Assembly (NCBI GenBank): GCA_964035545.1
Contig: CAXIUT010000238.1
Coordinates: 1-17,624 of the forward strand
Direction of reading: 5' to 3'
Origin: Bugula neritina
Taxonomy: Eukaryota; Animalia; Bryozoa
Length of the DNA stretch: 17,624 bases
The position numbers and the translations under genes were made by a program. Position 1 is the first letter of the stretch. Every line of letters starts with the position of its first letter. Shown piece after piece: positions 1-17,624 of this stretch. The notes beneath the pieces were generated by a model. It was not told where the DNA came from. It saw nothing but the letters and a program-made list of their open reading frames with translations, and ran no database searches.

Positions 1-87
1 CCCAACCCCAACCCCAACCCCAACCCCAACCCCAACCCCAACCCCAACCCCAACCCCAACCCCAACCCCAACCCCAACCCCAACCCC
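1..87. repeat. Left telomere, (CCCCAA)n
   Basis: Perfect tandem C4A2 hexamers from base 1 to 87, C-rich strand 5', followed abruptly by AT-rich unique sequence. C4A2 is the Tetrahymena-type ciliate repeat. Confidence 0.99.
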
Positions 88-144: not shown

Positions 145-1436
145 ATGTAAGACAAACCTAAGCAGTGGAAAAGAAAAATCGAAGGAAATAAAACATTGGC
201 CTCAGTCAAAAATCCTCTCAGAAATTTCATTTAAAAAGAATTGCCATCTATTGACCTCTCTAAATTTCCTGATAGACCCAAATAATCAGTTAATCTATCC
301 ATTGGTGACCCATCAGCTTCACCAGAATTCAGGTATTTCCACTAAAATCAAGAACTCACAAAGATAACCTCGAACATATCTCAGCCTGTGTAGGAAAAAA
401 CGATGGATACACTGAGTTTACAGGTATGCCAAGTGCCAGACAAGCAGTGGTGGATAAATTCAAAGTTGATGGCTATAGTCTAAGCAAAGATGATGTTTAC
501 TTAACAGCTGGCGGAAGTATGGCAATGTGGTCAGTCATAAATCTGCTTGCCCAAGATGGAGATAACTTTCTCTTTCCTTCTCCAGGATTTCCTCTTTCTC
601 TTACAATTGCTAAAAGTCTAGGATTGGAACCAAGATTCTATCATTTGCAGCCAGATAAACACTGGGAAGCCAATATAGAAGAAATGTAGAAACTAATCGA
701 CGCTAAAACTAAATTTATTCTCATTAATGACCCTTCGAATCCATTGGGATCAGTTTGGTCGGTAGAACACAAAAGATAAATAATTTAACTTGCTATTAGA
801 AGGAAAATTCCTTTGTTAGCAGATTAAATTTATGAGGAAATGAGCTATGAAACTAAACCTTCAACTTTTGCTGAACTAGTTAAACCAGAAGAAGCTGATA
901 AAGTTACAATATTCAAATGCTCAGGACTGACAAAAAGATTTTTAGCTCCTGGATGGCGTATGGGTTGGATCATACTCTACGCAGGCAAACAAGCCCAATA
1001 ATTCTATCATAATAAACTCCAAGGAATCTTTAATGTGATTCTGATGGCCACCAGTATTATGCAAGTAGCTCTTCCTTAAATTTTAAACAACCCAAACAAT
1101 CATGAAAAAATGATTTCAAGGCTAGACATGATGAAACAAAACGAATAGGATATCAAGAAATCTCTTCAGGAAGAAAAATATTGCACGGTTGGACATTCTT
1201 CAGGAGCTATGTACGCTACGATCATTATTAAACTTGATCAGTTCAAAGGAATCGATAATATGATCGAATTCGCCAAAATGCTTTTCGCATAGTAGAACGT
1301 TATGATCTTTCCTGGAGATTTTTTTGTATCAGAAAATACTTTTATCAGACTGGTCATTAGTTGTTCTCTCCCTAAGATAGAATAGTTTTTGGCTAGATTT
1401 AAACGTTTCTGTCGAAGACATCTCAAAGAAATCTGA
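145..1436 (+). CDS. TAT: Tyrosine aminotransferase (PLP-dependent class I aminotransferase), 423 aa; exons 145-332 and 353-1436
   Basis: Read with TAR=Glu: NPLRNF, NLSIGDP, DGY..TGMPSARQAV, DVYLTAGGS, PSPGFP, INDPSNPLGSV, LLADEIYEEM, SGLTKRFLAPGWRMGW (PLP lysine), GAMY, EENVMIFPG. Removing a 20-nt intron at 333-352 (GTATTTCCACTAAAATCAAG) restores the frame. Stop is TGA at 1434-1436. Confidence 0.93.
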
Positions 1437-4541: not shown

Positions 4542-4876
4542 TCAGTTATCCTTTTAATGTACTAGTTAAAAATTATTCACTCGAATGGGTACTAAATAAA
4601 TATTGTACTACTTATTGATTAAATAGATTTGTGTCCCTTACGTGAGTAGAACTTATTTATTGGTGTTATCTTTTGGTATTATTTTAAGTTTCAAAGCGAT
4701 GTCGATTGGTTGGTTGGGTTTGATGTTTGTGTGGATGGATGGAGGTGGGAATGTGGATGCTAGGGTTTGAGTCAGATGTTTGAAACCTATGTGTTTTTGG
4801 GTGTATTTGCTTTTTATTGTAATTTCGCTTTATAGAGATAGAGGTACCTTCCGTAGGGGAGTTAGAGGTGCTGCAT
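4542..4876 (-). CDS. Small hypothetical protein, 104 aa, weakly MSP/PapD-like beta-sandwich
   Basis: ATG at 4876, a 20-nt GTA..AG intron at 4828-4847 and TGA at 4542 give an exact 105-codon model: MQHLELPYGSEITIKSKYTQKHIGFKHLTQTLASTFPPPSIHTNIKPNQPIDIALKLKIIPKD... The ITIK..HIGFK and IKPNQPIDI spacing recalls MSP domains, by eye only. Confidence 0.55.
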
Positions 4877-5059
4877 TATTTGAATTTTTTATATTAAAAA
4901 TTTGGTATTTATGTTAATTCAAATCTAAAGGTATTAAAGAATAATAATCAATAAATAATGAAATATAAATGATAATATTATTTTGACTATTAAGCTTCAT
5001 TAATGAAAATTATAAACTATTTGATAGATAAGATATGATATTATAACTTATTCGATAAA

Positions 5060-5820
5060 ATGAAAATATCCTTCTTAGTAGCTATCTTTCTACTTTTAAT
5101 CGTATCAGCTAATTCACTAAGATTGCGTATTTTCATTTGTATTTAGAACCAAGTGAAGCACATTAACATTGGCATGATTAGCCTTGGCACGAGCATCATC
5201 ATGAAGATAATTAGCCTTGGCATAGATATTGGAACAGGCATTGGCATAGAAATGAAGATAATTAGCCTTGGCATTAATAGTGGCATAGACACTGGCATTA
5301 AAATTAAGATGAGTAGCCTTGGCACTAATATTGGCATTTTTACTGGATTTAGCATAGAAATGAAAATTAATCTTGGTATTAATTTTGGAATAGGTTTTGG
5401 AAATAACATAGAAATTAAGGTTAATCTTGGCACCAATATTGGCAAAGATATTGGAACTAAATTAAAAATAAAGATCATTCAACTTTACATAAAGAACTTT
5501 CCTCAAGAAGAAATCCTACAAAGAAAAATTAAATCGAAAAAGAATCCTAATCTAATATTTAAAAAGCTGAATCTACTTTATTGGAAAGAGTGGAAAAAGA
5601 TATAAAACAGTTGAATAAACTTGAAAAATTAATTAAATAAAACGATCAAAAAAAGAAACTTTCAGATCAGTCTGTCCTCAGAGATACTCCCTAGAAGAAT
5701 AAAATCAAAGTTTCAGATCAACCAGTCCTAAGAGATAATTCTTAAAACAATAAAACTAAGCTTTTTATTCCTATTATTCATAATTCAAAAGTATTTTCTG
5801 TTCCAAACAAGAAGAGTTGA
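5060..5820 (+). CDS. Secreted Trp/His/Glu-rich repeat protein, 246 aa; exons 5060-5126 and 5147-5820
   Basis: Signal peptide MKISFLVAIFLLLIVSANS, 20-nt intron at 5127-5146, then HEHWHDEPWHEHHHEDN-EPWHRYWNRHWHRNEDN-EPWHEEWHRHWHENEDE-EPWHEYWHFYWIEHRNEN-ESWYEFWNRFWKEHRNEG-ESWHQYWQRYWNE, a charged coiled-coil-like segment, and TGA at 5818-5820. Confidence 0.85.
5212..5475 (+). repeat. Coding tandem repeat, five degenerate units of 51-54 nt (starts 5212, 5263, 5314, 5368, 5422)
   Basis: Each unit begins TAGCCTTGG or TAATCTTGG and has TGG at codons 3, 7 and 11. A partial unit starts at 5179. Confidence 0.9.
5662..5763 (+). repeat. Two-copy 51-nt coding repeat in the C-terminus of the secreted protein
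   Basis: SDQSVLRDTPEKNKIKV and SDQPVLRDNSENNKTKL, with units starting at 5662 and 5713. Confidence 0.8.
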
Positions 5821-5881: not shown

Positions 5882-6376
5882 TCAAGGTTTAGAGTATTTG
5901 TAATTTTCCAGCATTTAAAAAAATATTTTATCTCCATTTTATTACTCTTACGATGAACTCTCAATCTTTTACAATATCTTTTGCCCTCCCATTTTCTTCT
6001 TATTTATCTCTTTTCCACTACTCTCTACTCGTACAGTAGTTGAAGGTTCTTCTCGATACTATTCACCTGAATTATCGCTAATAAAAGTTTTATTAGTTAT
6101 TTGTATTTTAGGTACATTTCTTTTCTTCTTATTTTTTTATTCTTCTTTACTTTTAGGTCTGACAACTAAGTATGTAACTGATGCAACTGCGATAATAAGG
6201 ATAACTGTTTTATTCTAATTATAGAATTCTTTTGATTTGTCGATGATAGGTTATGCTTTTTAAAGGGCTGTATCTATGTGAGGTTTAGTGAACTATTTTA
6301 TGTAGGCGAATAGAGTGAGAGTATTTGATGAGATAAATTTATATGCTTTCATTAAGTTTGACTATTCATTGATCAT
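5882..6376 (-). CDS. Hypothetical single-pass membrane protein, 164 aa
   Basis: Intronless, ATG at 6376 to TGA at 5882. One hydrophobic stretch TVILIIAVASVTYLVV is followed by the basic segment RPKSKEEEKNKKKR, and the tail is acidic (SSSEEEENGDKIFFEMLENYKYSKP). Confidence 0.7.
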
Positions 6377-6537
6377 TTGCTTATATTTTTTATTTTAGAT
6401 TAGAAATCTTAAGGCTAATATGCAACTACAAGTATCAAAATTTTGATAAAAATTCTAATTATGGACCATTATGATAGTATTTTGAAGAGATTGTAGTTTA
6501 TAAGTATGATTAGCTTTACTTTTTAAATTATATTTAA

Positions 6538-6810
6538 ATGGACTTTTCAAAACATTCAGAAGGAACGACTTCCGTTAAGGTACATCATCAACCTGGAGGG
6601 AAAAGCAACTTCTCTATTGGATGGGATAACAATGAACCAGCTCCCAAGAAGACCAACAACACCCAACCAGCCGTTGAACCAACAGCTCCTCAATCTAAAC
6701 CCAACAACATCGCAGGATTAGCACAAAAAAAAGAAGAAGAAGCACCCAACAAGACTTCAGTAAAGGTACATAATCCTCCAGGAGGAAAATCAAACTTTAC
6801 CCTTGGCTGA
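6538..6810 (+). CDS. Jupiter/HN1/SPIRAL1-like small microtubule-associated protein, 90 aa
   Basis: Two PGG motifs, TSVKVHHQPGGKSNFSIG and TSVKVHNPPGGKSNFTLG, joined by a low-complexity linker. This matches the S-x-[KR]-V-x-x-x-PGG-x-S-x-F/L motif of HN1/Jupiter and SPIRAL1. It ends in TGA and contains no TAR codons. Confidence 0.85.
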   Translation: MDFSKHSEGTTSVKVHHQPGGKSNFSIGWDNNEPAPKKTNNTQPAVEPTAPQSKPNNIAGLAQKKEEEAPNKTSVKVHNPPGGKSNFTLG

Positions 6811-8098: not shown

Positions 8099-8168
8099 TG
8101 CTACGACCGGGAATCGAACCCGGGTCAGAGCGATGGCATCGCTCTATGCTACCACTACCCATCGTAGC
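8099..8168 (-). tRNA. tRNA-Gly(GCC), 70 nt, D-stem one base short
   Basis: GCTACGA TG GGT AGTGGTA GCAT A GAGCG ATGCCAT CGCTC TGAC CCGGG TTCGATT CCCGG TCGTAGC A. It has a perfect 7-bp acceptor stem, a canonical T arm/B box and a GCC anticodon. Confidence 0.9.
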
Positions 8169-10628: not shown

Positions 10629-11860
10629 TCATGATTATTTGCAAGCCTCTGGATCAGAAACTCTTCTTTATAATTAAGCCATATTAGCAAGTATATTATT
10701 ATGCATTTAATTAACTCCTGGAATAATGATGCTAAGTTCTTTCCAGAGAGGAAGTACAAATCCTCTGCAGAATCCGATTTGTCCTCCATAGAAAGTTTTA
10801 AGATCTTTATATTTATAAAAAACAGTAACATCTAATCCAGTATTTTTTTATCTAGTGGCAACCTACTAAAACTAGAAATTGACCAAAGAACTCCAATTCA
10901 TATAATTATTAAAGTCCAAACACGGATTGCCGATATCGCATCCATGGAATACTTATTCCATCAAAAACTATATAAATAAATAATTACCAAAACCCCCTTT
11001 CCATTAAATTTCTGAGCTTTGTGCATTATTTTCAAATGCTATAGATCTTTGAAGTGGGTGCTTACGTCGGTGGACAGTACCATTCTTGTTATTAGATGTC
11101 TTATATAGGCGGAGTCGAGAGATGTGTAGTTATTGAGGAAGTTGATGTTTTTGTCTTTTTTTAGGAGATTCCAGAATTAGTATAAATGCATTTTTTACAT
11201 TACTGCCATATTGCTACCCTATACTGCTAGTTGACTTTTGCTTTTAACTTCAAATGCATTTGTTGTTCCTGGATGTCTCAAATCATGCACCAAGGCTGAT
11301 ATAAATATATAAAACCACTATTTTTAATTTAGTTTTGTTTGCAGTTCAGGGCAGCGATTGTATGTCTGGAAAAGAAGCTATATTAAATAAAGATGTACCA
11401 GTAGCAATGAAAATGCGTGACTGAAATTGTGATAGGCAATAATATTGTAATTATCTGCTATTGTTTCTAGCAATTGGTCGATATTGAATGAATTTGCGAT
11501 GGTTTGGCGTTCGCTGTTGGCAGTGAGTATCAATTTAGAGAAATTTATTAGCTAAGAAATTGTGTATGATAGAACGGGGAAATCTAATTTGTTGAGATCC
11601 TATAAATCGACTATAGGTTTAGGAGGGGGAAAGTTTTGTAATCTGAAGCAGGATAGGGGAGGTAGGCTATCTTGGAGGTTATACCTGTTTTTGAAGGCTT
11701 GAACATCAGTGATGGATTTGTTGTGTTTTTATAGTTTAGACCATCTTGAACTTGGAGCTTTTTTGATGTGGGAGATCAGGACGAAGGAATCTTAGGGGAT
11801 GAGGTTGCCGTTGTTGGCTGATTTGCGGGATGGTTTGGGTTTATCGATGATCATACTCAT
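10629..11860 (-). CDS. Class I 3',5'-cyclic nucleotide phosphodiesterase (PDEase_I), 396 aa, catalytic domain only
   Basis: Motifs IAYHNFSHAF, SALVHDLRHPGTTNAF, AVMEKMH, MVLSTDVSTHF, FHGCDIGNP, NWSSLVNFEF and GQIGFCRGFVLPLW. Introns are 11378-11398 (21 nt; removal restores normal His-to-HD spacing) and 10968-10987 (20 nt, frame-restoring). Stop is TGA at 10629-10631. Confidence 0.93.
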
Positions 11861-12169
11861 TGCTTCTATTATTTATATATTTAGAAAAACGGAAAATAAC
11901 AAGAAATAAATAGTAAGTACTTGATCTTAAGCAACCACGCTTTTAATATTTTATTTTTGGTACTAATAGAGATAAAAGGTTATTTATTTTATGTTTATAA
12001 ATGAATAATTAATTTTTCTGATAAGATGAAACAAAAGTATAATAAAATCATAAAAATAAACAAAATGATATAATTTGAATATAAACTTTTGTGTTAGTCT
12101 TGAGTTGGTATTCAGAAAGAGTAATAGAACATTAATTATTGTATCACTATTTTAAATAATAAACAGAGA
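11861..12169. promoter_or_regulatory. Divergent AT-rich intergenic region, presumed bidirectional promoter (PDE / ART-TPR)
   Basis: 309 nt of very AT-rich sequence between two head-to-head ATGs. No specific element was identified. Confidence 0.4.
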
Positions 12170-15100
12170 ATGAACAAGTCTTAGTAGACTGATATCAGTT
12201 CAACTGAGTATACTTATACTGTAACTCGAGCCAAACCTAAAAGATATAGCTAATCTAAAGATCTAAAAGACAAACAATTGATTATTATCAACAACTCTAT
12301 GAACAAATAGGCATAGGAATAATAATAACTGTAAGATACTTCAATGGTAAATTTAAGGACAACATCAGGTAAAAAAAAATAAGATTACGTATAGCTACCT
12401 AAAATAAACTTTCAAGCTGCCATGCTAAATGATAAAAATAGAAGACCATCATAAGTGAACATCAAACTGCCACTAATTTATGAAGATTAAGACGATTCTA
12501 ACAATAATGGAACTAATGCTGTTCCATCTGATGAAGTATAAAGCGATTACCTTGATGAAATAGAATAACAGAAAGGTTAGTGGAATAATTGGAACATACA
12601 GCAGTTAAAAATAGCTACTCCTGCTCGAGATAATTATATCTAGTCGGAATATTCGCTTGTACCTGAATCGATATCTGATAGAAAAAAAAAATAAAGAAAG
12701 ATGTCCAGAGATGTCTAGAAAGAAATGTAGAGAAGATAGAGATAGAGAAATCTATAAATGGTTAGTAACTTTTTATCTGGGAAGGCATCGATGGTGTGGC
12801 TATTTGTGCTGGGAGATGAAATATAGGAAGATGAAATCGCTAAAGTTAAATAGATATATCGATAGTCAATAGATAATGATTATGAAATACCAGTATGTAG
12901 GAGTTATAAAGAAGCATGTCGGTTTTTGAATTTATCCAACTGTTTTTTCAAATTGGTTGTTGATCTTAATATCTCTGAGAAGTTTCTTTAGTAGTCCTAG
13001 AACAACAAGAATATAGCTTCTATTTATATCTATAATCCCTATCAGGTTTAGGGAATTAATCGAGCTTTTTAAATGAAAAGAGGAACAAAAAAAATCAAAG
13101 GGATGTTCAATGATTTACGAGAAGTTACTAAACAGGCTAAAGTATAGCTATAAAATGAGGCTAAATTTGTTAGAGTTGGGTAGGATCTTTAGACATAAAA
13201 AAATAAATTAAGATTTCCTAGTTTTATCACTCTTACTGGAAGCGATAGTACTGATGTAACTAACTATCGATTGTGTTTATTTGGAGCTTTGAAATTAAGA
13301 TAGAAGAATGAGAGATAGGCCTATTTGAAGTAGTTTACAGATATGGTCTAACTTAGATATAAAGATGTAGATAAATAATTGTAACATCTGATAGAATATA
13401 AAAGAATTGATCATCTAGGCTAAAATACAGAATAAAAGATGAGAGAAATCTTATCATTTTACGTGAAGTAAACTTTTTATTATGTTTTAACTAATTCTAT
13501 ACTGAGGTTATCGAGAAGTGCATAAGAATTTAGGCCGTGCACTATTCCTTTCAACTAGACCTACCATGCTATTAAACATTTTTATCTTAGAAGTCAGAAA
13601 TAGGGTAAAATATCAAATAATATGATCGTATATCGAGGAGCTAAATTACGTAACAGTGATGTATCATCTTTATCGATAGGTAGTTTCGTATAGTTGCTTG
13701 GTTTTACTTCAACATCATTGAAAAGATCTGAGGCATAGAAATTTATGGATGGAGATTCTTATTTAATAGAAATACATATATAGGAGGGTAGCAAATCAAG
13801 TAAATAGTCATAGAAATTGTATGATCATGGGTATGTATAGATAAATAGGTATGGGTTGGCATCTAAGGCATTTCAGAAATAGTAGTAGGTTCTTTTTAAT
13901 GCGTTAAATGTGTTTCAGGTGACAGGTTTAGATTTCCATTCTGCTGTTAGAAAAATAACTATGAAATATGGTGCTATTTTACCACTTCTTCGCTCAAAAC
14001 CACAAGAACTTAATCCTCATGATCGATCGGTTATGTAAAACTATCGATATTGTTTATAAACCTTTTAGTAAATATAAGATGACGGTGATGTTCTCATGAT
14101 AGCCCAGTAGCATAACCGATGTGTAGAATATTACCAGGGGAAGGTCGATAGAGGCGATGCAGATTTCAAGATATATGGGAAATTGGCTAATGCTCAGCTA
14201 TAAAGTGGTGATCTTGAGGAGGCTTATACTAATGCATTGAAATCTTTATAGTAATTAGAAGATACTTCCCAAAGTAGTTAAGAAATAAAGAAGACAGTGA
14301 ATCAACTTAAAAAGAATTCTAATATATTTGACTTCAAAGAAGATTATGTGCATTATTATCATAGTATTGATTCATGTGTACAATTGTTGAAGTAGCAGGA
14401 TTGGTTTTAGAGTGCAAAATTATATAAATAAAAGGCATAGAAGAAATTAAAAATATGTGATTTTGAAGGTTGTTAGCTAGATTTACAATCAAGTCGGAAA
14501 GTTATATAGGAGTATGCTGATTCATTTGAAATAAGACGTAAAAAAATATAAAAAAGATATTATTTAAGATCTTTATGTTGCGGATGTGTTAGAAATGCTC
14601 ATTAGATGTAGTAGCAAAAATAATTTTAGTTGATTAAAGTTTAAGAGGAATAGATTTAGTTTTAAAGAAGAAAGGAGGAAGTGCATTAACTTTATATATA
14701 GATATAAAATATTACTAGAGAATTAGCTGAATAAATTGGTAATAAAAAAATGTATAGTGATAGTTTGTAAGCCAGTCAAAAACATTTCGGACAGATGGAA
14801 AAGCAATCATTGCTTAATCCGATTGTTTAGGCTAAATTTGTTGCAATATAAGCTAGTACTTTTGACAAACATGATAATTTACCACAATTTTAGGTGAAAA
14901 TGGAATAGGCAATAAAAAAAGTTAAAAAACATGATCCTTTTCATAAAGATATTGGACAGTATTGCAACGTACTGGGCACCGAACGTCATGTGGCAATTAA
15001 AAGAAAGTTATTACTAACCCCTTTGAAAAATTATTAATCATATCAAGATATAAATTCAGAAGATAATGCTCCTATCATATAAACCGAAAAAAGACCAGCA

Positions 15101-16330
15101 TAGAAGTATAACTATGAAGAGCATGAGAAGTTGAGAGTGAAGAGTAAAGATGCATTGACTTAGGCTGCATAGAATATCGCATATAATAAAGGAAAGTAGA
15201 GTCCAGATTATTTATCAGTTAGAAATAAAATAGGATAACTTGATCTTGAAACTTCTAGGTTGTCAGAATCATAAAAATTGGTTAAGTAAACTTTGCAGTT
15301 CAAGATGGTTCGTTTTCATTCATAAGGTGCCAAATGCTATCTTTTGCTAACTAAAATATCACTTGCCAAGGGAGAGTTAAAGGTATCTTTTGTTAATTTG
15401 GAACATGCTTTCTAGATATTGAGAAATACTCTTTTGAAAGTTGATAATAGTCAATACAATTCGATTTTGTTGAACAATCCCTTATATATTGACATAAACC
15501 TCCACAAAGCTAAAATATTCAACCGTCAGTTGAAACACGACCTCGCTTTGAAATAGCTAAAAGTTCTCAATAAAATAGCATAGATACGACGAGATAGACA
15601 CCACAATAGTACGATACTAGCCTCTGTTCTTGAATAGTAGGCACAGATATAACTTTGTACTGGCTAGACTGACACTTTCGAATAAAAGTTGTTATAGGCA
15701 ATACAAATAAGATAGATTTAGATGGGAAAATACAATATTCCTAATGCTATAGCATATTCTAATCTTTTCAAATTTATGTTGAATCTTCAGGACAAAGAAA
15801 TGGCAATGGAATATCATTTGAAGGCTACATAGATATTTTCTCGTTTTCCGGCTGATCATCCTAACTTCTGGGTCATTCATCTTTCCAATGCTCTAGTCTA
15901 TTTGAATGAATAACAATATCATAGATGTCTATAGTAGTTATAAAACTGTTTGAAGGTCACTCACTATCGATATAGTTTGAACCATATCATTACCCTAAAG
16001 ATAAACTTGCAATTTGCCCAGATGTTGCGAAAGATGTAGAAAACAGAGCGAGCAATATCGGTGCTTCAATAGTTAGAGGGCACAGTGCTTAGATATCTAA
16101 AATAGAAATAAGAAAACGGGTAGAAATTATAACGAGAAACAGATGACTAGAAATATCCATTATTAAAAAACGTATACAAGCAGTTGAAAGATATCCATCA
16201 GGTGGATGAGAATTAACCTGGCAGTCGGACATAGAATAATTTATTGGAGATGCAAAAATATGAGAAGCAGTTGAAAGATATGTAGGGGATGTTGAGAGGT
16301 AGTAATGTGAATGAAATATAGAGAGGTTGA
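12170..16330 (+). CDS. Large mono-ADP-ribosyltransferase (R-S-E / ARTC class) with C-terminal TPR-like repeats, 1386 aa, intronless
   Basis: A 4161-nt frame with no internal TGA. ART motifs are ILSFYVKETFYYVLTNSILR, MIVYRGAKL (R489, 13634), GFTSTSLKRSEAEKF (S514-T-S516, 13709-13717), YLIEIHI and FQKEEEVLFNALNVFQV (E571-x-E573, 13880-13888). Downstream helical repeats include IYGKLANAQLESGDLEEAYTNALKSL and AIAYSNLFKFMLNLQDKEMAMEYHLKATEIFSRFPADHPN. Confidence 0.88.
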
Positions 16331-16409: not shown

Positions 16410-16731
16410 ATGTCTCAGGTACATGTTTTTTTAGGTAGGGTGGAGTGTAAAGCAAGAAATAATAATTCAAAAAGTATCTAGAGAAGACGGGAGCTGTAGA
16501 TCAGCTCACTAAAATACTTGTTGACTTATATGAGGAGCCTGAAAAACCAGGAAATGCTGTTGATTTTATCAAAAGGCGGCTGGGAGGGGGAGAGGAAATC
16601 GATGGGGGACGACTGAAGCAGGAATACGAGTCGGCCAAGCAAGAAAACGAGAAGTTGAAGAAGCAGATAAAAGATGTAAAAGATGAGGTATATAATAAGT
16701 GATGTAGATTGAGAAAAGGAAGAATTTGTGA
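16410..16731 (+). CDS. MYCBP: c-Myc-binding protein homologue (MYCBP/AMY-1; FAP174-like ciliary protein), 93 aa
   Basis: ESKKEEFKKYLEKTGAVDQLTKILVDLYEEPEKPGNAVDFIKRRLG matches the family pattern SKREQFRRYLEKSGVLDTLTKVLVALYEEPEKP. Predicted 20-nt introns are 16419-16438 and 16688-16707. If the second is retained the stop is at 16700-16702. Confidence 0.92.
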
Positions 16732-17499: not shown

Positions 17500-17507
17500 C
17501 TTATTTA

Positions 17508-17624
17508 GGGGTTGGGGTTGGGTTGGGGTTGGGGTTGGGGTTGGGGTTGGGGTTGGGGTTGGGGTTGGGGTTGGGGGTTGGGGTTGGGGTTGGGGTTGGG
17601 GTTGGGGTTGGGGTTGGGGTTGGG
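17508..17624. repeat. Right telomere, (TTGGGG)n
   Basis: Tandem T2G4 repeats to the end of the window, G-rich strand 3', complementary in orientation to the left telomere. There is one G5 variant. Confidence 0.99.

What the first reader, a model, noticed from the sequence alone, without database searches (positions are those of the whole stretch)
5060..5820. Secreted Trp/His/Glu repeat protein (WxxxWxxxW): candidate underwater adhesive, stalk or metal-crosslinked material
Seen: a signal peptide, then 100 codons (5161-5460) containing 17 Trp and 19 His by hand count. These are arranged as five E[PS]WxxxWxxxW units separated by acidic N/E/D linkers, grading from His-rich to Tyr/Phe-rich, followed by a charged coiled-coil-like segment and a second 17-aa duplication. 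There is no cysteine. Trp at i, i+4, i+8 would form an aromatic stripe on a helix flanked by His/Glu ligands. Established: His-metal coordination and aromatic or cation-pi interactions drive pH-triggered assembly in mussel byssus and squid beak proteins, and sessile peritrichs secrete stalks, holdfasts and loricae. Inference: a structural or extrusome cargo that condenses on secretion, or a secreted metal chelator or membrane-active peptide precursor. I do not recognise the family.
Basis: partly seen in the sequence, partly recalled or inferred. Interest (0 to 1): 0.75.

Follow-up and report, generated by a model that had tools for sequence, protein, structure and literature searches.

The report
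Ciliate secreted Trp/His repeat protein
A tiny chromosome of a ciliate that travelled with a moss-animal genome carries a real gene for an exported protein with five regular units very rich in tryptophan and histidine. No relative was found, and its job (self-assembling material, membrane-active agent or metal binder) is still a guess.

Summary
Codons 5161-5460 contain 17 Trp, 19 His and 22 Glu, 17 of the Glu written TAA or TAG. They form five E-[PS]-W-x3-W-x3-W units plus one truncated unit. The 246-aa product has no Cys and carries a 17-aa duplication near its end.

The Trp frame is the coding frame. All 17 TGG triplets are invariant while their flanks vary. The tail in the same frame scores higher on codon usage than all 230 off-frame control windows.

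TAA and TAG both fit Glu best in this window, which is the known peritrich code.

ATG 5060 opens the only signal-peptide-like start among 357 ATG-initiated open stretches in the window. A 20-nt intron (5127-5146, or alternatively 5102-5121) joins it to the Trp frame. No RNA evidence was available.

No paralogue, Pfam family or public copy was found. The Trp module has no stop-free piece of 20 aa or more, so it could not be sent to protein or structure searches.

The units look like short amphipathic helices with an aromatic face and a neighbouring His stripe. The module has pI about 5.7 and the tail about 10.

A pH- or metal-switched self-assembling secreted protein is my best guess. A membrane-active protein is nearly as likely. 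The scan has no note of this protein on other DNA.

The parts
5060..5126 (+). Exon 1: start codon and signal peptide (aa 1-22 plus the first base of codon 23)
   Evidence: The ATG sits in an AAAATG context. There is an MK n-region, a 13-residue hydrophobic core and V-S-A before the likely cleavage site. It is the only signal-peptide-like start among 357 ATG-initiated open stretches in the window.
5127..5146 (+). Preferred 20-nt intron (phase 1), 80% A+T
   Evidence: It fits GTAY-N10-A-N3-AG. It has the same length and GTATTT start as the intron at 333-352, whose removal restores the conserved aminotransferase sequence. Removing it joins the signal peptide to the Trp frame. No RNA evidence.
5102..5121 (+). 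Alternative 20-nt intron candidate
   Evidence: It fits the same consensus and gives the same frame shift. It would lengthen the hydrophobic N-terminus and remove the V-S-A site, so it is less likely. It is not excluded.
5147..5817 (+). Exon 2: the rest of the 246-aa product in the Trp frame
   Evidence: The frame is open to the TGA at 5818. All 17 TGG are invariant while their flanks vary. The tail's codon-usage score of +22 bits exceeds all 230 off-frame control windows.
5161..5211 (+). His-rich lead and truncated unit (aa 28-44)
   Evidence: Translation. H-x3-H and H-x-H motifs are listed.
5212..5475 (+). Five 17-18-aa units, each E-[PS]-W-x3-W-x3-W plus an N/E/D linker (aa 45-132)
   Evidence: The hydrophobic moment peaks at 85-95 degrees.
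5527..5637 (+). Charged K/E-rich amphipathic segment, coiled-coil-like (aa 150-186)
   Evidence: Hydrophobic residues at 3/4 spacing. No predictor was run.
5650..5751 (+). Tandem 17-aa duplication (aa 191-207 and 208-224)
   Evidence: TRF gives period 51, 2 copies and 79% matches. The copies differ mostly at third codon positions of this frame (7 of 12), including cag/caa, ctc/cta and tag/taa. This was read from the sequence.
5752..5817 (+). C-terminal 22 aa, mixed hydrophobic and basic
   Evidence: It has no paralogue in the assembly and no Pfam match.
5818..5820 (+). TGA stop codon
   Evidence: TGA is absent from all long coding frames of the window and is the only stop used.

Best explanation
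Shown: this is a real, single-copy gene of a ciliate that uses the peritrich code (TAA/TAG = Glu, TGA = stop). It lies on a complete 17.6-kb telomere-capped chromosome. It encodes a 246-aa protein whose repeat region is read in the Trp frame.

Very probable: a 20-nt intron joins a classical signal peptide to that frame, so the protein enters the secretory pathway.

Inferred: the N-terminal module is an array of five to six short amphipathic helices.
- Each helix is N-capped by Glu-Pro or Glu-Ser and closed by His-Arg-Asn or Gly.
- Each has an aromatic face made of Trp at i, i+4 and i+8 plus an aromatic residue or His at i+3 and i+7.
- In the first units a His stripe (positions 2, 6, 10) lies next to that face.

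The module is strongly acidic at seawater pH and turns cationic below about pH 5.7. The C-terminal half is basic (pI about 10) and partly coiled-coil-like.

My best guess for the mechanism follows from that. The protein is kept soluble, all-cationic, in an acidic secretory compartment. On release to neutral or alkaline water, or on binding Zn, Cu or Ni through the His pairs, it self-associates. The aromatic faces pack together and the acidic module pairs with the basic tail. It would then be a condensing matrix or coating protein: granule cargo, stalk, holdfast or surface layer.
For: Context: (CCCCAA)n and (GGGGTT)n lie at the two ends of the window. The window is contig C247 of a 216-Mb assembly whose large contigs belong to another organism.

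Frame:
- All 17 TGG are invariant while the flanking bases vary. In any other frame, on either strand, that would need an invariant third codon position.
- Second codon positions vary least: 4 changes against 7 and 8.
- The tail scores +22 bits, above all 230 off-frame windows (maximum 4.5).
- The tail duplication differs mostly at third positions.

Code:
- In an aminotransferase alignment with five bacterial homologues, TAA fits E best (55, against Q 22 and K 8). TAG also fits E best (47, against Q 16 and K 3).
- The TAA in the D-x-I-Y motif aligns to E in 5 of 5 homologues.
- TAA sits at the Glu of the phosphodiesterase L-E-N-H-H-type motif, and three TAG sit where an ExE motif is expected.

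Secretion: ATG 5060 is the only signal-peptide-like start of 357. A 20-nt consensus intron sits where the frame shift is needed. A 20-nt intron is verified by homology at 333-352.

Physical chemistry:
- The hydrophobic moment peaks at 85-95 degrees.
- The module has pI 5.7, with charge -17 at pH 8.1, -12.5 at pH 7 and +5 at pH 5.
- The tail has pI 10.

There are six H-x3-H pairs.

Precedent: squid-beak His-rich proteins self-coacervate when pH rises from acidic, through His and aromatic contacts (PMC10766971).
Against: - No RNA evidence for the splice. The intron consensus is weak: 8 matches in the window against 6.2 expected by chance. A second candidate exists at 5102-5121.
- An in-frame ATG at 5035 could start an unspliced, non-secreted product.
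- No homologue, paralogue or family was found, so there is no conservation evidence for function.
- No structure model could be made. The helices are inferred from periodicity and capping residues only, and simple propensities for Trp, His and Tyr do not favour helix.
- Known His-rich material proteins are Gly-rich and disordered, unlike this one, which has a single Gly.
- Nothing links the gene to a stalk, holdfast or granule.
Confidence: 0.35

Rival explanations
1. It is a membrane-active secreted or food-vacuole protein, or a multi-peptide precursor. The Trp-stripe helices bind membrane interfaces. Acidification protonates His and Glu, turns the acidic module cationic and switches on binding to or lysis of ingested bacteria or other targets. 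The acidic linkers act as neutralising spacers.
For: - Trp has the strongest interfacial preference of any residue, and four of the five units have a favourable summed Wimley-White interfacial energy even with charged Glu.
- Five of the ten W-x3-W intervals carry Arg at the middle position. That is the W-X1-X2-X3-W design (X2 or X3 = R/K) used to stabilise amphipathic helices in synthetic antimicrobial peptides (PMC12292521 and PMC12947016).
- The charge flips from -12.5 at pH 7 to +5 at pH 5 and +18 at pH 4.
- Bacterivorous ciliates acidify their food vacuoles (established knowledge).
Against: - The module is strongly anionic at neutral pH, and units 2 and 3 are net acidic, unlike known cationic peptides.
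- No recognisable processing sites such as dibasic pairs flank the units.
- The long basic, coiled-coil-like tail is not expected of a peptide precursor.
- No homology to any pore-former or antimicrobial family.
Confidence: 0.25
2. It is a secreted or lumenal metal-binding protein that buffers, scavenges or stores Zn, Cu or Ni. The His pairs at i, i+4 and the many Glu and Asp residues are the ligands. The Trp residues only stabilise the helices.
For: The 100-aa module holds 19 His and 26 acidic residues. There are six H-x3-H and seven H-x-H motifs. Di-His sites at i, i+4 on helices are classical metal sites (established knowledge).
Against: His content falls to one per unit core in units 4 and 5 while Trp stays invariant, so selection appears to act on Trp rather than on the ligands. 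No known metal-binding domain was found. There are no Cys residues.
Confidence: 0.1
3. It is the same Trp/His protein but is not secreted. Translation starts at the in-frame ATG at 5035 without splicing, which gives a cytosolic protein. The signal-peptide-like ORF at 5060 would then be a coincidence or an upstream out-of-frame ORF.
For: The Trp frame is open back to 4987 and contains an ATG at 5035-5037, upstream of 5060. The intron consensus is not enriched in the window. No RNA data are available.
Against: Signal-peptide-like starts are rare here, 1 in 357. One lies directly in front of the module, with a consensus 20-nt intron placed to give the needed shift. ATG 5060 has the A-rich AAAATG context and 5035 does not. 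Codon scores for this short stretch do not decide between the two.
Confidence: 0.1
4. It is a young, fast-evolving low-complexity orphan ORF with no specific function, or the repeat is not translated in the Trp frame at all. The second case covers the Ile/Gly-rich ATG frame read without splicing, a minus-strand frame, or non-coding tandem DNA.
For: - The ATG frame runs unspliced from 5060 to the TGA at 5612.
- One minus-strand frame scores +13.8 bits in the repeat.
- No relative was found anywhere.
Against: - Only a single-codon amino acid explains 17 invariant TGG triplets among varying flanks. The ATG frame would need T at the third position in 17 of 17 preceding codons and mostly the rare GGC for Gly.
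- The high-scoring minus-strand frame has no Met at all.
- The tail is clearly coding in the Trp frame.
- The tail duplication shows synonymous changes.
- No Pfam family matches in any frame.
Confidence: 0.1

Closest known systems
Histidine-rich structural proteins of marine animals (squid beak HBPs; by recall also Nereis jaw Nvjp-1 and mussel His-rich domains)
   Same: They are secreted and modular, with tandem repeats rich in His and aromatic residues. Their charge is set by His titration. pH rise from an acidic store triggers self-association through His-aromatic and pi-pi contacts (PMC10766971).
   Different: Those repeats are Gly-rich pentapeptides (GHGLY type), disordered and without Trp. 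Here there is one Gly in 246 aa, 17 Trp at a strict spacing of 4, acidic linkers and predicted helices. No sequence similarity could be tested or seen.
Diatom cingulins (Trp- and Tyr-rich girdle-band matrix proteins)
   Same: They are secreted protist proteins built of highly repetitive Trp- or Tyr-rich regions alternating with charged regions. They form an insoluble extracellular organic matrix (PMC4557024).
   Different: Cingulins alternate aromatic regions with KXXK (silaffin-like) regions and carry RXL processing sites. Here a single aromatic module is followed by one basic tail, without that alternation. The lineage is unrelated, and homology was not testable here.
Designed Trp-stripe helical antimicrobial peptides (W-x3-W motif: RILK1, RKW)
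   Same: W-X1-X2-X3-W with Arg or Lys in the middle stacks Trp at i and i+4, stabilises an amphipathic helix and creates a Trp cluster on one face (PMC12292521 and PMC12947016). Five of the ten intervals here have Arg at X2.
   Different: Those are 13-residue, strongly cationic synthetic peptides. Here the units sit in a 246-aa protein, the module is net -12.5 at pH 7, and His and Glu dominate the polar face.
Exchangeable apolipoproteins (Pro-punctuated tandem amphipathic helices); from established knowledge
   Same: They are secreted, with tandem amphipathic helical units separated by Pro, and bind hydrophobic or lipid surfaces.
   Different: Their period is 11 or 22 residues with Leu-rich faces, and they belong to a defined Pfam family. 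Here the period is 17-18, the face is Trp-rich, and there is no Pfam match.
Ciliate dense-core granule matrix proteins (Paramecium trichocyst matrix proteins, Tetrahymena Grl); from established knowledge
   Same: They are ciliate secretory proteins with a signal peptide, acidic regions and heptad or coiled-coil segments. They are stored condensed and change state on release.
   Different: Those families are not Trp- or His-rich, belong to multigene families and are proteolytically processed. Here the gene is single-copy in the available contigs and no similarity could be shown.

Membership tests
Gene using the peritrich nuclear code (NCBI table 30) | TAA encodes Glu | tested here: met
   Six TAA columns in the aminotransferase alignment fit E best (55, against D 31, Q 22 and K 8). 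The TAA in the D-x-I-Y motif aligns to E in 5 of 5 homologues. TAA also sits at the Glu of the phosphodiesterase L-E-N-H-H-type motif. The sample is small.
Gene using the peritrich nuclear code (NCBI table 30) | TAG encodes Glu (not Gln; and TAA is not Lys as in Oligohymenophorea sp. PL0344) | tested here: met
   Five TAG columns fit E best (47, against Q 16 and K 3). Three TAG codons stand where an ExE motif is expected at 13880-13888. TAG and TAA interchange at the first codon of the repeat units. The known codes are described in PMC10553269.
Gene using the peritrich nuclear code (NCBI table 30) | TGA is the only stop | tested here: met
   There are ORFs of 375 to 1408 codons free of TGA but full of TAA and TAG. 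TGA occurs 0 times per 3274 training codons, against 25 per 1000 off frame.
Secretory protein with a cleavable N-terminal signal peptide | Basic n-region, uncharged hydrophobic h-region of 7-15 residues, and small residues at -3 and -1 | tested here: met
   The n-region is MK, the h-region has 13 uncharged residues, and V-S-A precedes N-S. This is a rule-based check only, and the start is unique among 357 ATG starts. SignalP was not available.
Secretory protein with a cleavable N-terminal signal peptide | The signal peptide is in frame with the mature protein in the mRNA | not testable with these tools
   This needs the 20-nt splice (5127-5146 or 5102-5121). The consensus fits, but no RNA data could be reached.
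Squid-beak-type His-rich material proteins | Gly/His/Tyr pentapeptide repeats (GHGLY type) in disordered, Gly-rich sequence | tested here: not met
   There is one Gly in 246 aa. The repeats are 17-18 aa with Trp at a spacing of 4.
Diatom cingulins | Alternation of Trp/Tyr-rich regions with KXXK regions, and RXL processing motifs | tested here: not met
   There is one aromatic module followed by one basic tail, with no alternation. Sequence homology could not be tested.
Cationic Trp-rich helical antimicrobial peptides | W-x3-W with a basic residue at X2 or X3, plus net positive charge at neutral pH | tested here: inconclusive
   The motif is met in 5 of 10 intervals. The charge criterion is not met at pH 7 (module -12.5) and is met only below about pH 5.7.
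Thrombospondin type-1 / C-mannosylation Trp motifs | W-x-x-W spacing in a Cys-knotted domain | tested here: not met
   The spacing here is W-x3-W throughout and there is no Cys.
Any Pfam family | Significant match to a curated profile | tested here: inconclusive
   The three stop-free tail pieces, the ATG-frame ORF and the minus-strand ORF give nothing significant; the best is MspA at E = 0.27. The Trp module itself has no stop-free piece of 20 aa or more, so it was never scanned.

The most novel reading that the evidence does not exclude
This is a previously undescribed kind of extracellular building protein of sessile ciliates. It is a Pro/Ser-punctuated array of Trp-stripe helices with an adjacent His stripe. 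The array acts as a pH- and metal-gated switch for underwater assembly or adhesion (stalk, holdfast, lorica or granule matrix), and it evolved independently of the Gly/His/Tyr materials of molluscs and annelids.
Probability: 0.15. Interest if true: 0.7.

Novelty: new variant of a known kind. Interest (0 to 1): 0.4.

Why it matters
If the protein does assemble or adhere on a pH or metal cue, it would be a helix-based, Trp-driven counterpart to the Gly/His/Tyr materials of squid beaks and worm jaws. It would also be the first molecular handle on what peritrich ciliates secrete to attach themselves, about which I found no proteomic data.

If it is instead membrane-active, it would be a natural version of the W-x3-W design now used for synthetic antimicrobial peptides, with a built-in His switch.

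There is also a practical lesson. Ordinary annotation would miss this gene. A standard-code gene caller sees only the off-frame Ile/Gly ORF, and 23 of its 246 codons are TAA or TAG.

As it stands, this is a well-supported orphan gene with an extreme composition and no functional evidence.

Tried and rejected
- **Ile/Gly-rich ATG frame (5060-5611, unspliced).** Rejected. It would need 17 of 17 preceding codons to end in T and mostly the rare GGC Gly codon. Its codon scores are negative.
- **Minus-strand frames.** One has no Met. One needs 17 of 17 CCA Pro codons. One contains many TGA.
- **Codon-usage score inside the repeat.** Ambiguous: the Trp frame scores +4 and one minus frame +13.8. I did not rely on it.
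- **Array of micro-exons and tiny introns**, as reported elsewhere in this genome. Rejected because GT dinucleotides are almost absent from the repeat.
- **Paralogues in the assembly.** I searched by DNA, two Trp-spacing patterns, the off-frame ORF as protein and the C-terminal piece. Only the gene itself appeared among the small contigs.
- **Public proteins.** A word search with the off-frame ORF gave nothing. Exact look-ups of six standard-code ORFs of the window were not in the collection.
- **Pattern scans of metagenome and genome contigs**.
- **Intron consensus enrichment in the window.** Not significant.
- **Rfam and tRNA scan.** Nothing in the region.
- **Literature.** No Trp/His repeat protein of ciliates and no peritrich stalk proteome was found.
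- **Left out.** The spliced, read-through 246-aa product and its Trp module were not sent to any protein, atlas or structure tool. They have no stop-free reference, and I did not type them in.

Full report
**What the window is.** The window starts with (CCCCAA)n and ends with (GGGGTT)n. It is the whole of contig C247 in a 216-Mb, 321-contig assembly whose multi-megabase contigs belong to another organism. Earlier notes of this scan name the host as a moss animal, Bugula neritina, and the small telomere-capped contigs as a passenger ciliate. I treated those notes as leads.

Read with TGA as the only stop, the window holds ordinary eukaryotic genes:
- a class I/II aminotransferase (PF00155, E = 1e-9);
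- a gamma-tubulin complex protein (weak N- and C-terminal Pfam hits on pieces);
- a class I phosphodiesterase (PF00233);
- a 1408-codon ORF;
- a tRNA-Gly.

**Genetic code.** I tested TAA and TAG separately, because a ciliate with TAA = Lys and TAG = Glu is known (PMC10553269). I aligned the aminotransferase, read with X at the reassigned codons, to five bacterial homologues fetched from plasmid records.
- Six TAA columns fit Glu best: BLOSUM sum 55, against Gln 22 and Lys 8.
- Five TAG columns also fit Glu best: 47, against 16 and 3.
- In the controls, true GAR codons return Glu. True CAR codons return Gln and Glu almost equally (45 against 42). AAR codons do not discriminate.
- The TAA inside the D-x-I-Y motif aligns to Glu in 5 of 5 homologues.
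- TAA stands at the Glu of the phosphodiesterase L-E-N-H-H-type motif, and three TAG stand before V-L-F where an ExE motif is expected. The motif identities come from my own knowledge.

The sample is small. It agrees with the known peritrich code and with the earlier notes on other contigs.

**Which frame is translated.** Because only TGA stops translation, several frames are open over the repeat. These include the ATG frame read straight through (Ile/Gly-rich, ending at the TGA at 5612) and two minus-strand frames. Four things decide for the Trp frame.
- All 17 TGG triplets are invariant while the bases around them have diverged. Across the five unit cores the minimum changes are 7, 4 and 8 at codon positions 1, 2 and 3. 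Only a single-codon amino acid explains this. Every other frame on either strand would need an invariant third codon position next to variable first and second positions. The ATG frame would also use the rare GGC codon for most Gly, although GGC is only 15 of the 108 Gly codons in the window's other genes.
- The non-repetitive tail 5461-5817 scores +22 bits in this frame. That is above all 230 off-frame control windows (maximum 4.5) and within the upper range of 46 true in-frame windows. The other two plus-strand frames score -9.6 and -4.2.
- The two copies of the 51-nt duplication differ at third positions in 7 of 12 differences, three of them purely synonymous codon changes (read; repeat).
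- The best-scoring minus-strand frame has no Met at all.

**How the signal peptide is joined.** The Trp frame is not the ATG frame, so 3n+2 nucleotides must be removed. This ciliate has 20-nt introns. Removing 333-352 from the aminotransferase gene restores the conserved S-I-G-D-P...G-Y region across a frame shift. Earlier notes give the consensus GTAY-N10-A-N3-AG. Two 20-nt stretches fit it here, 5127-5146 and 5102-5121. Either one gives the Trp frame, and both cannot be removed together, because that runs into a TGA (and reading). I prefer 5127-5146: it is 80% A+T, starts GTATTT and preserves the V-S-A cleavage site.

The consensus alone is weak, with 8 matches in the window against 6.2 by chance. 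The support is therefore circumstantial. The only signal-peptide-like start among 357 ATG starts in the window lies immediately upstream of an independently supported coding frame, with a consensus intron at the required place.

A rival start at ATG 5035, in frame and unspliced, would give a protein without a signal peptide. I give that about 10%. No RNA evidence could be obtained.

**Relatives.** None were found, but the test was limited.
- Within the assembly, DNA, two spacing patterns, the off-frame ORF and the C-terminal piece found only the gene itself among the small contigs.
- The public protein word search with the off-frame ORF, which is what a standard-code gene caller would predict, found nothing. 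Six exact look-ups were negative.
- Pfam found nothing in any frame.
- The Trp module has no stop-free piece of 20 aa or more (the longest is 16 aa). Neither it nor the joined spliced product could be handed to the protein, atlas or structure tools by reference, and I did not type it in. Protein-level homology and fold of the module are therefore untested.

**Anatomy and likely physics.**
- Each unit starts with Glu-Pro or Glu-Ser, which are helix N-caps, and ends with His-Arg-Asn or Gly.
- On a helical wheel, Trp lies at 0, 40 and 80 degrees. Positions i+3 and i+7, mostly Tyr, Phe or His, lie at 300 and 340 degrees.
- His at positions 2, 6 and 10 lies at 100-180 degrees in units 1-3.
- The mean hydrophobic moment over the module peaks at 85-95 degrees and is low at 160-180 degrees. 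This favours short amphipathic helices over strands.
- With model pKa values, the module has pI 5.7. Its charge is -17 at pH 8.1, -12.5 at pH 7, +5 at pH 5 and +18 at pH 4.
- The tail has pI 10 and the mature protein 6.7.
- There are six H-x3-H pairs.

**What it does.** These features allow three mechanisms that I cannot separate.
- Assembly on a rise in pH or on metal binding, through the aromatic faces and pairing of the acidic module with the basic tail. The precedent is squid-beak His-rich proteins (PMC10766971).
- Acid-switched membrane binding. The precedent is the W-x3-W design of helical antimicrobial peptides.
- Metal binding.

I rank assembly first (0.35) because of the oligomerising tail, the dipolar charge layout and the invariance of Trp rather than His. 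Membrane activity comes second (0.25).

**Comparison and novelty.** The protein meets no tested defining feature of squid-beak His-rich proteins, cingulins or thrombospondin-type Trp motifs. It meets the antimicrobial W-x3-W pattern only in part. It works most like the broad kind 'secreted His/aromatic-rich repeat protein', built differently: helical and Trp-based with acidic linkers. I file it as a new variant of a known kind, with a 15% chance that it represents a new type of ciliate building material. The scan's notebook shows no other record of this protein on other DNA.

Noticed in passing
window 1-86 and about 17500-17624: The contig is a complete 17.6-kb chromosome capped by (CCCCAA)n and (GGGGTT)n. 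The right-hand tract contains irregular units (GGGTT and GGGGGTT).
   Followed up: partly
window 145-1436 (+), intron 333-352: This is a tyrosine-aminotransferase-like gene (PF00155) with one 20-nt phase-2 intron. Removing the intron restores the conserved S-I-G-D-P...G-Y region. It has 13 in-frame TAA/TAG codons, one of them at the D-E-I-Y motif.
   Followed up: yes
window 5102-5121 and 5139-5158: Two further 20-nt GTA...AG stretches overlap or flank the preferred intron. All give the same frame shift. The first fits the A-at-15 consensus and the second does not. They may be alternative splice sites or chance.
   Followed up: partly
window 4560-4947 (-): The open frame upstream of the first Met of the gamma-tubulin-complex gene is Pro/Thr/His/Ser-rich, has no Met and makes the plus strand G-rich (GC skew +0.27). 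It is either an unrecognised 5' exon or an unusually composed intergenic spacer next to the Trp/His gene's promoter.
   Followed up: no
window 13880-13888 (+), inside ORF 12104-16327: Three consecutive TAG codons stand directly before V-L-F, downstream of an F-T-S-T-S motif. Read as Glu, they would form the ExE motif of an ADP-ribosyltransferase. Another finding of the scan covers this gene.
   Followed up: partly
window 10964-11800 (-): This is a class I cyclic-nucleotide phosphodiesterase (PF00233 on one piece) with the H-D-x-x-H-P-G motif. A TAA sits where the family has the Glu of L-E-N-H-H.
   Followed up: partly
window 6538-6810 (+): A small protein has two V-K-V-H-x-P-P-G-G-K-S-N-F motifs. 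From memory it resembles the HN1/Jupiter microtubule-associated family. Pfam gave only a weak DUF4057 hit.
   Followed up: partly
window 16466-16699 (+): A short protein resembles c-Myc-binding protein (MYCBP/AMY-1) by recalled sequence (Y-L-E-K-x-G...L-Y-E-E-P-E-K-P). Pfam returned only generic coiled-coil hits.
   Followed up: partly
window 8099-8168 (-): tRNA-Gly(GCC) is the only RNA gene that ARAGORN and Rfam find in the window. There is no suppressor tRNA on this chromosome.
   Followed up: yes
window 5885-6400 (-): A convergent neighbouring ORF ends about 65 nt downstream of the Trp/His gene's stop. It encodes a small protein with one hydrophobic segment. The very short 3' spacing suggests tightly packed genes.
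   Followed up: no
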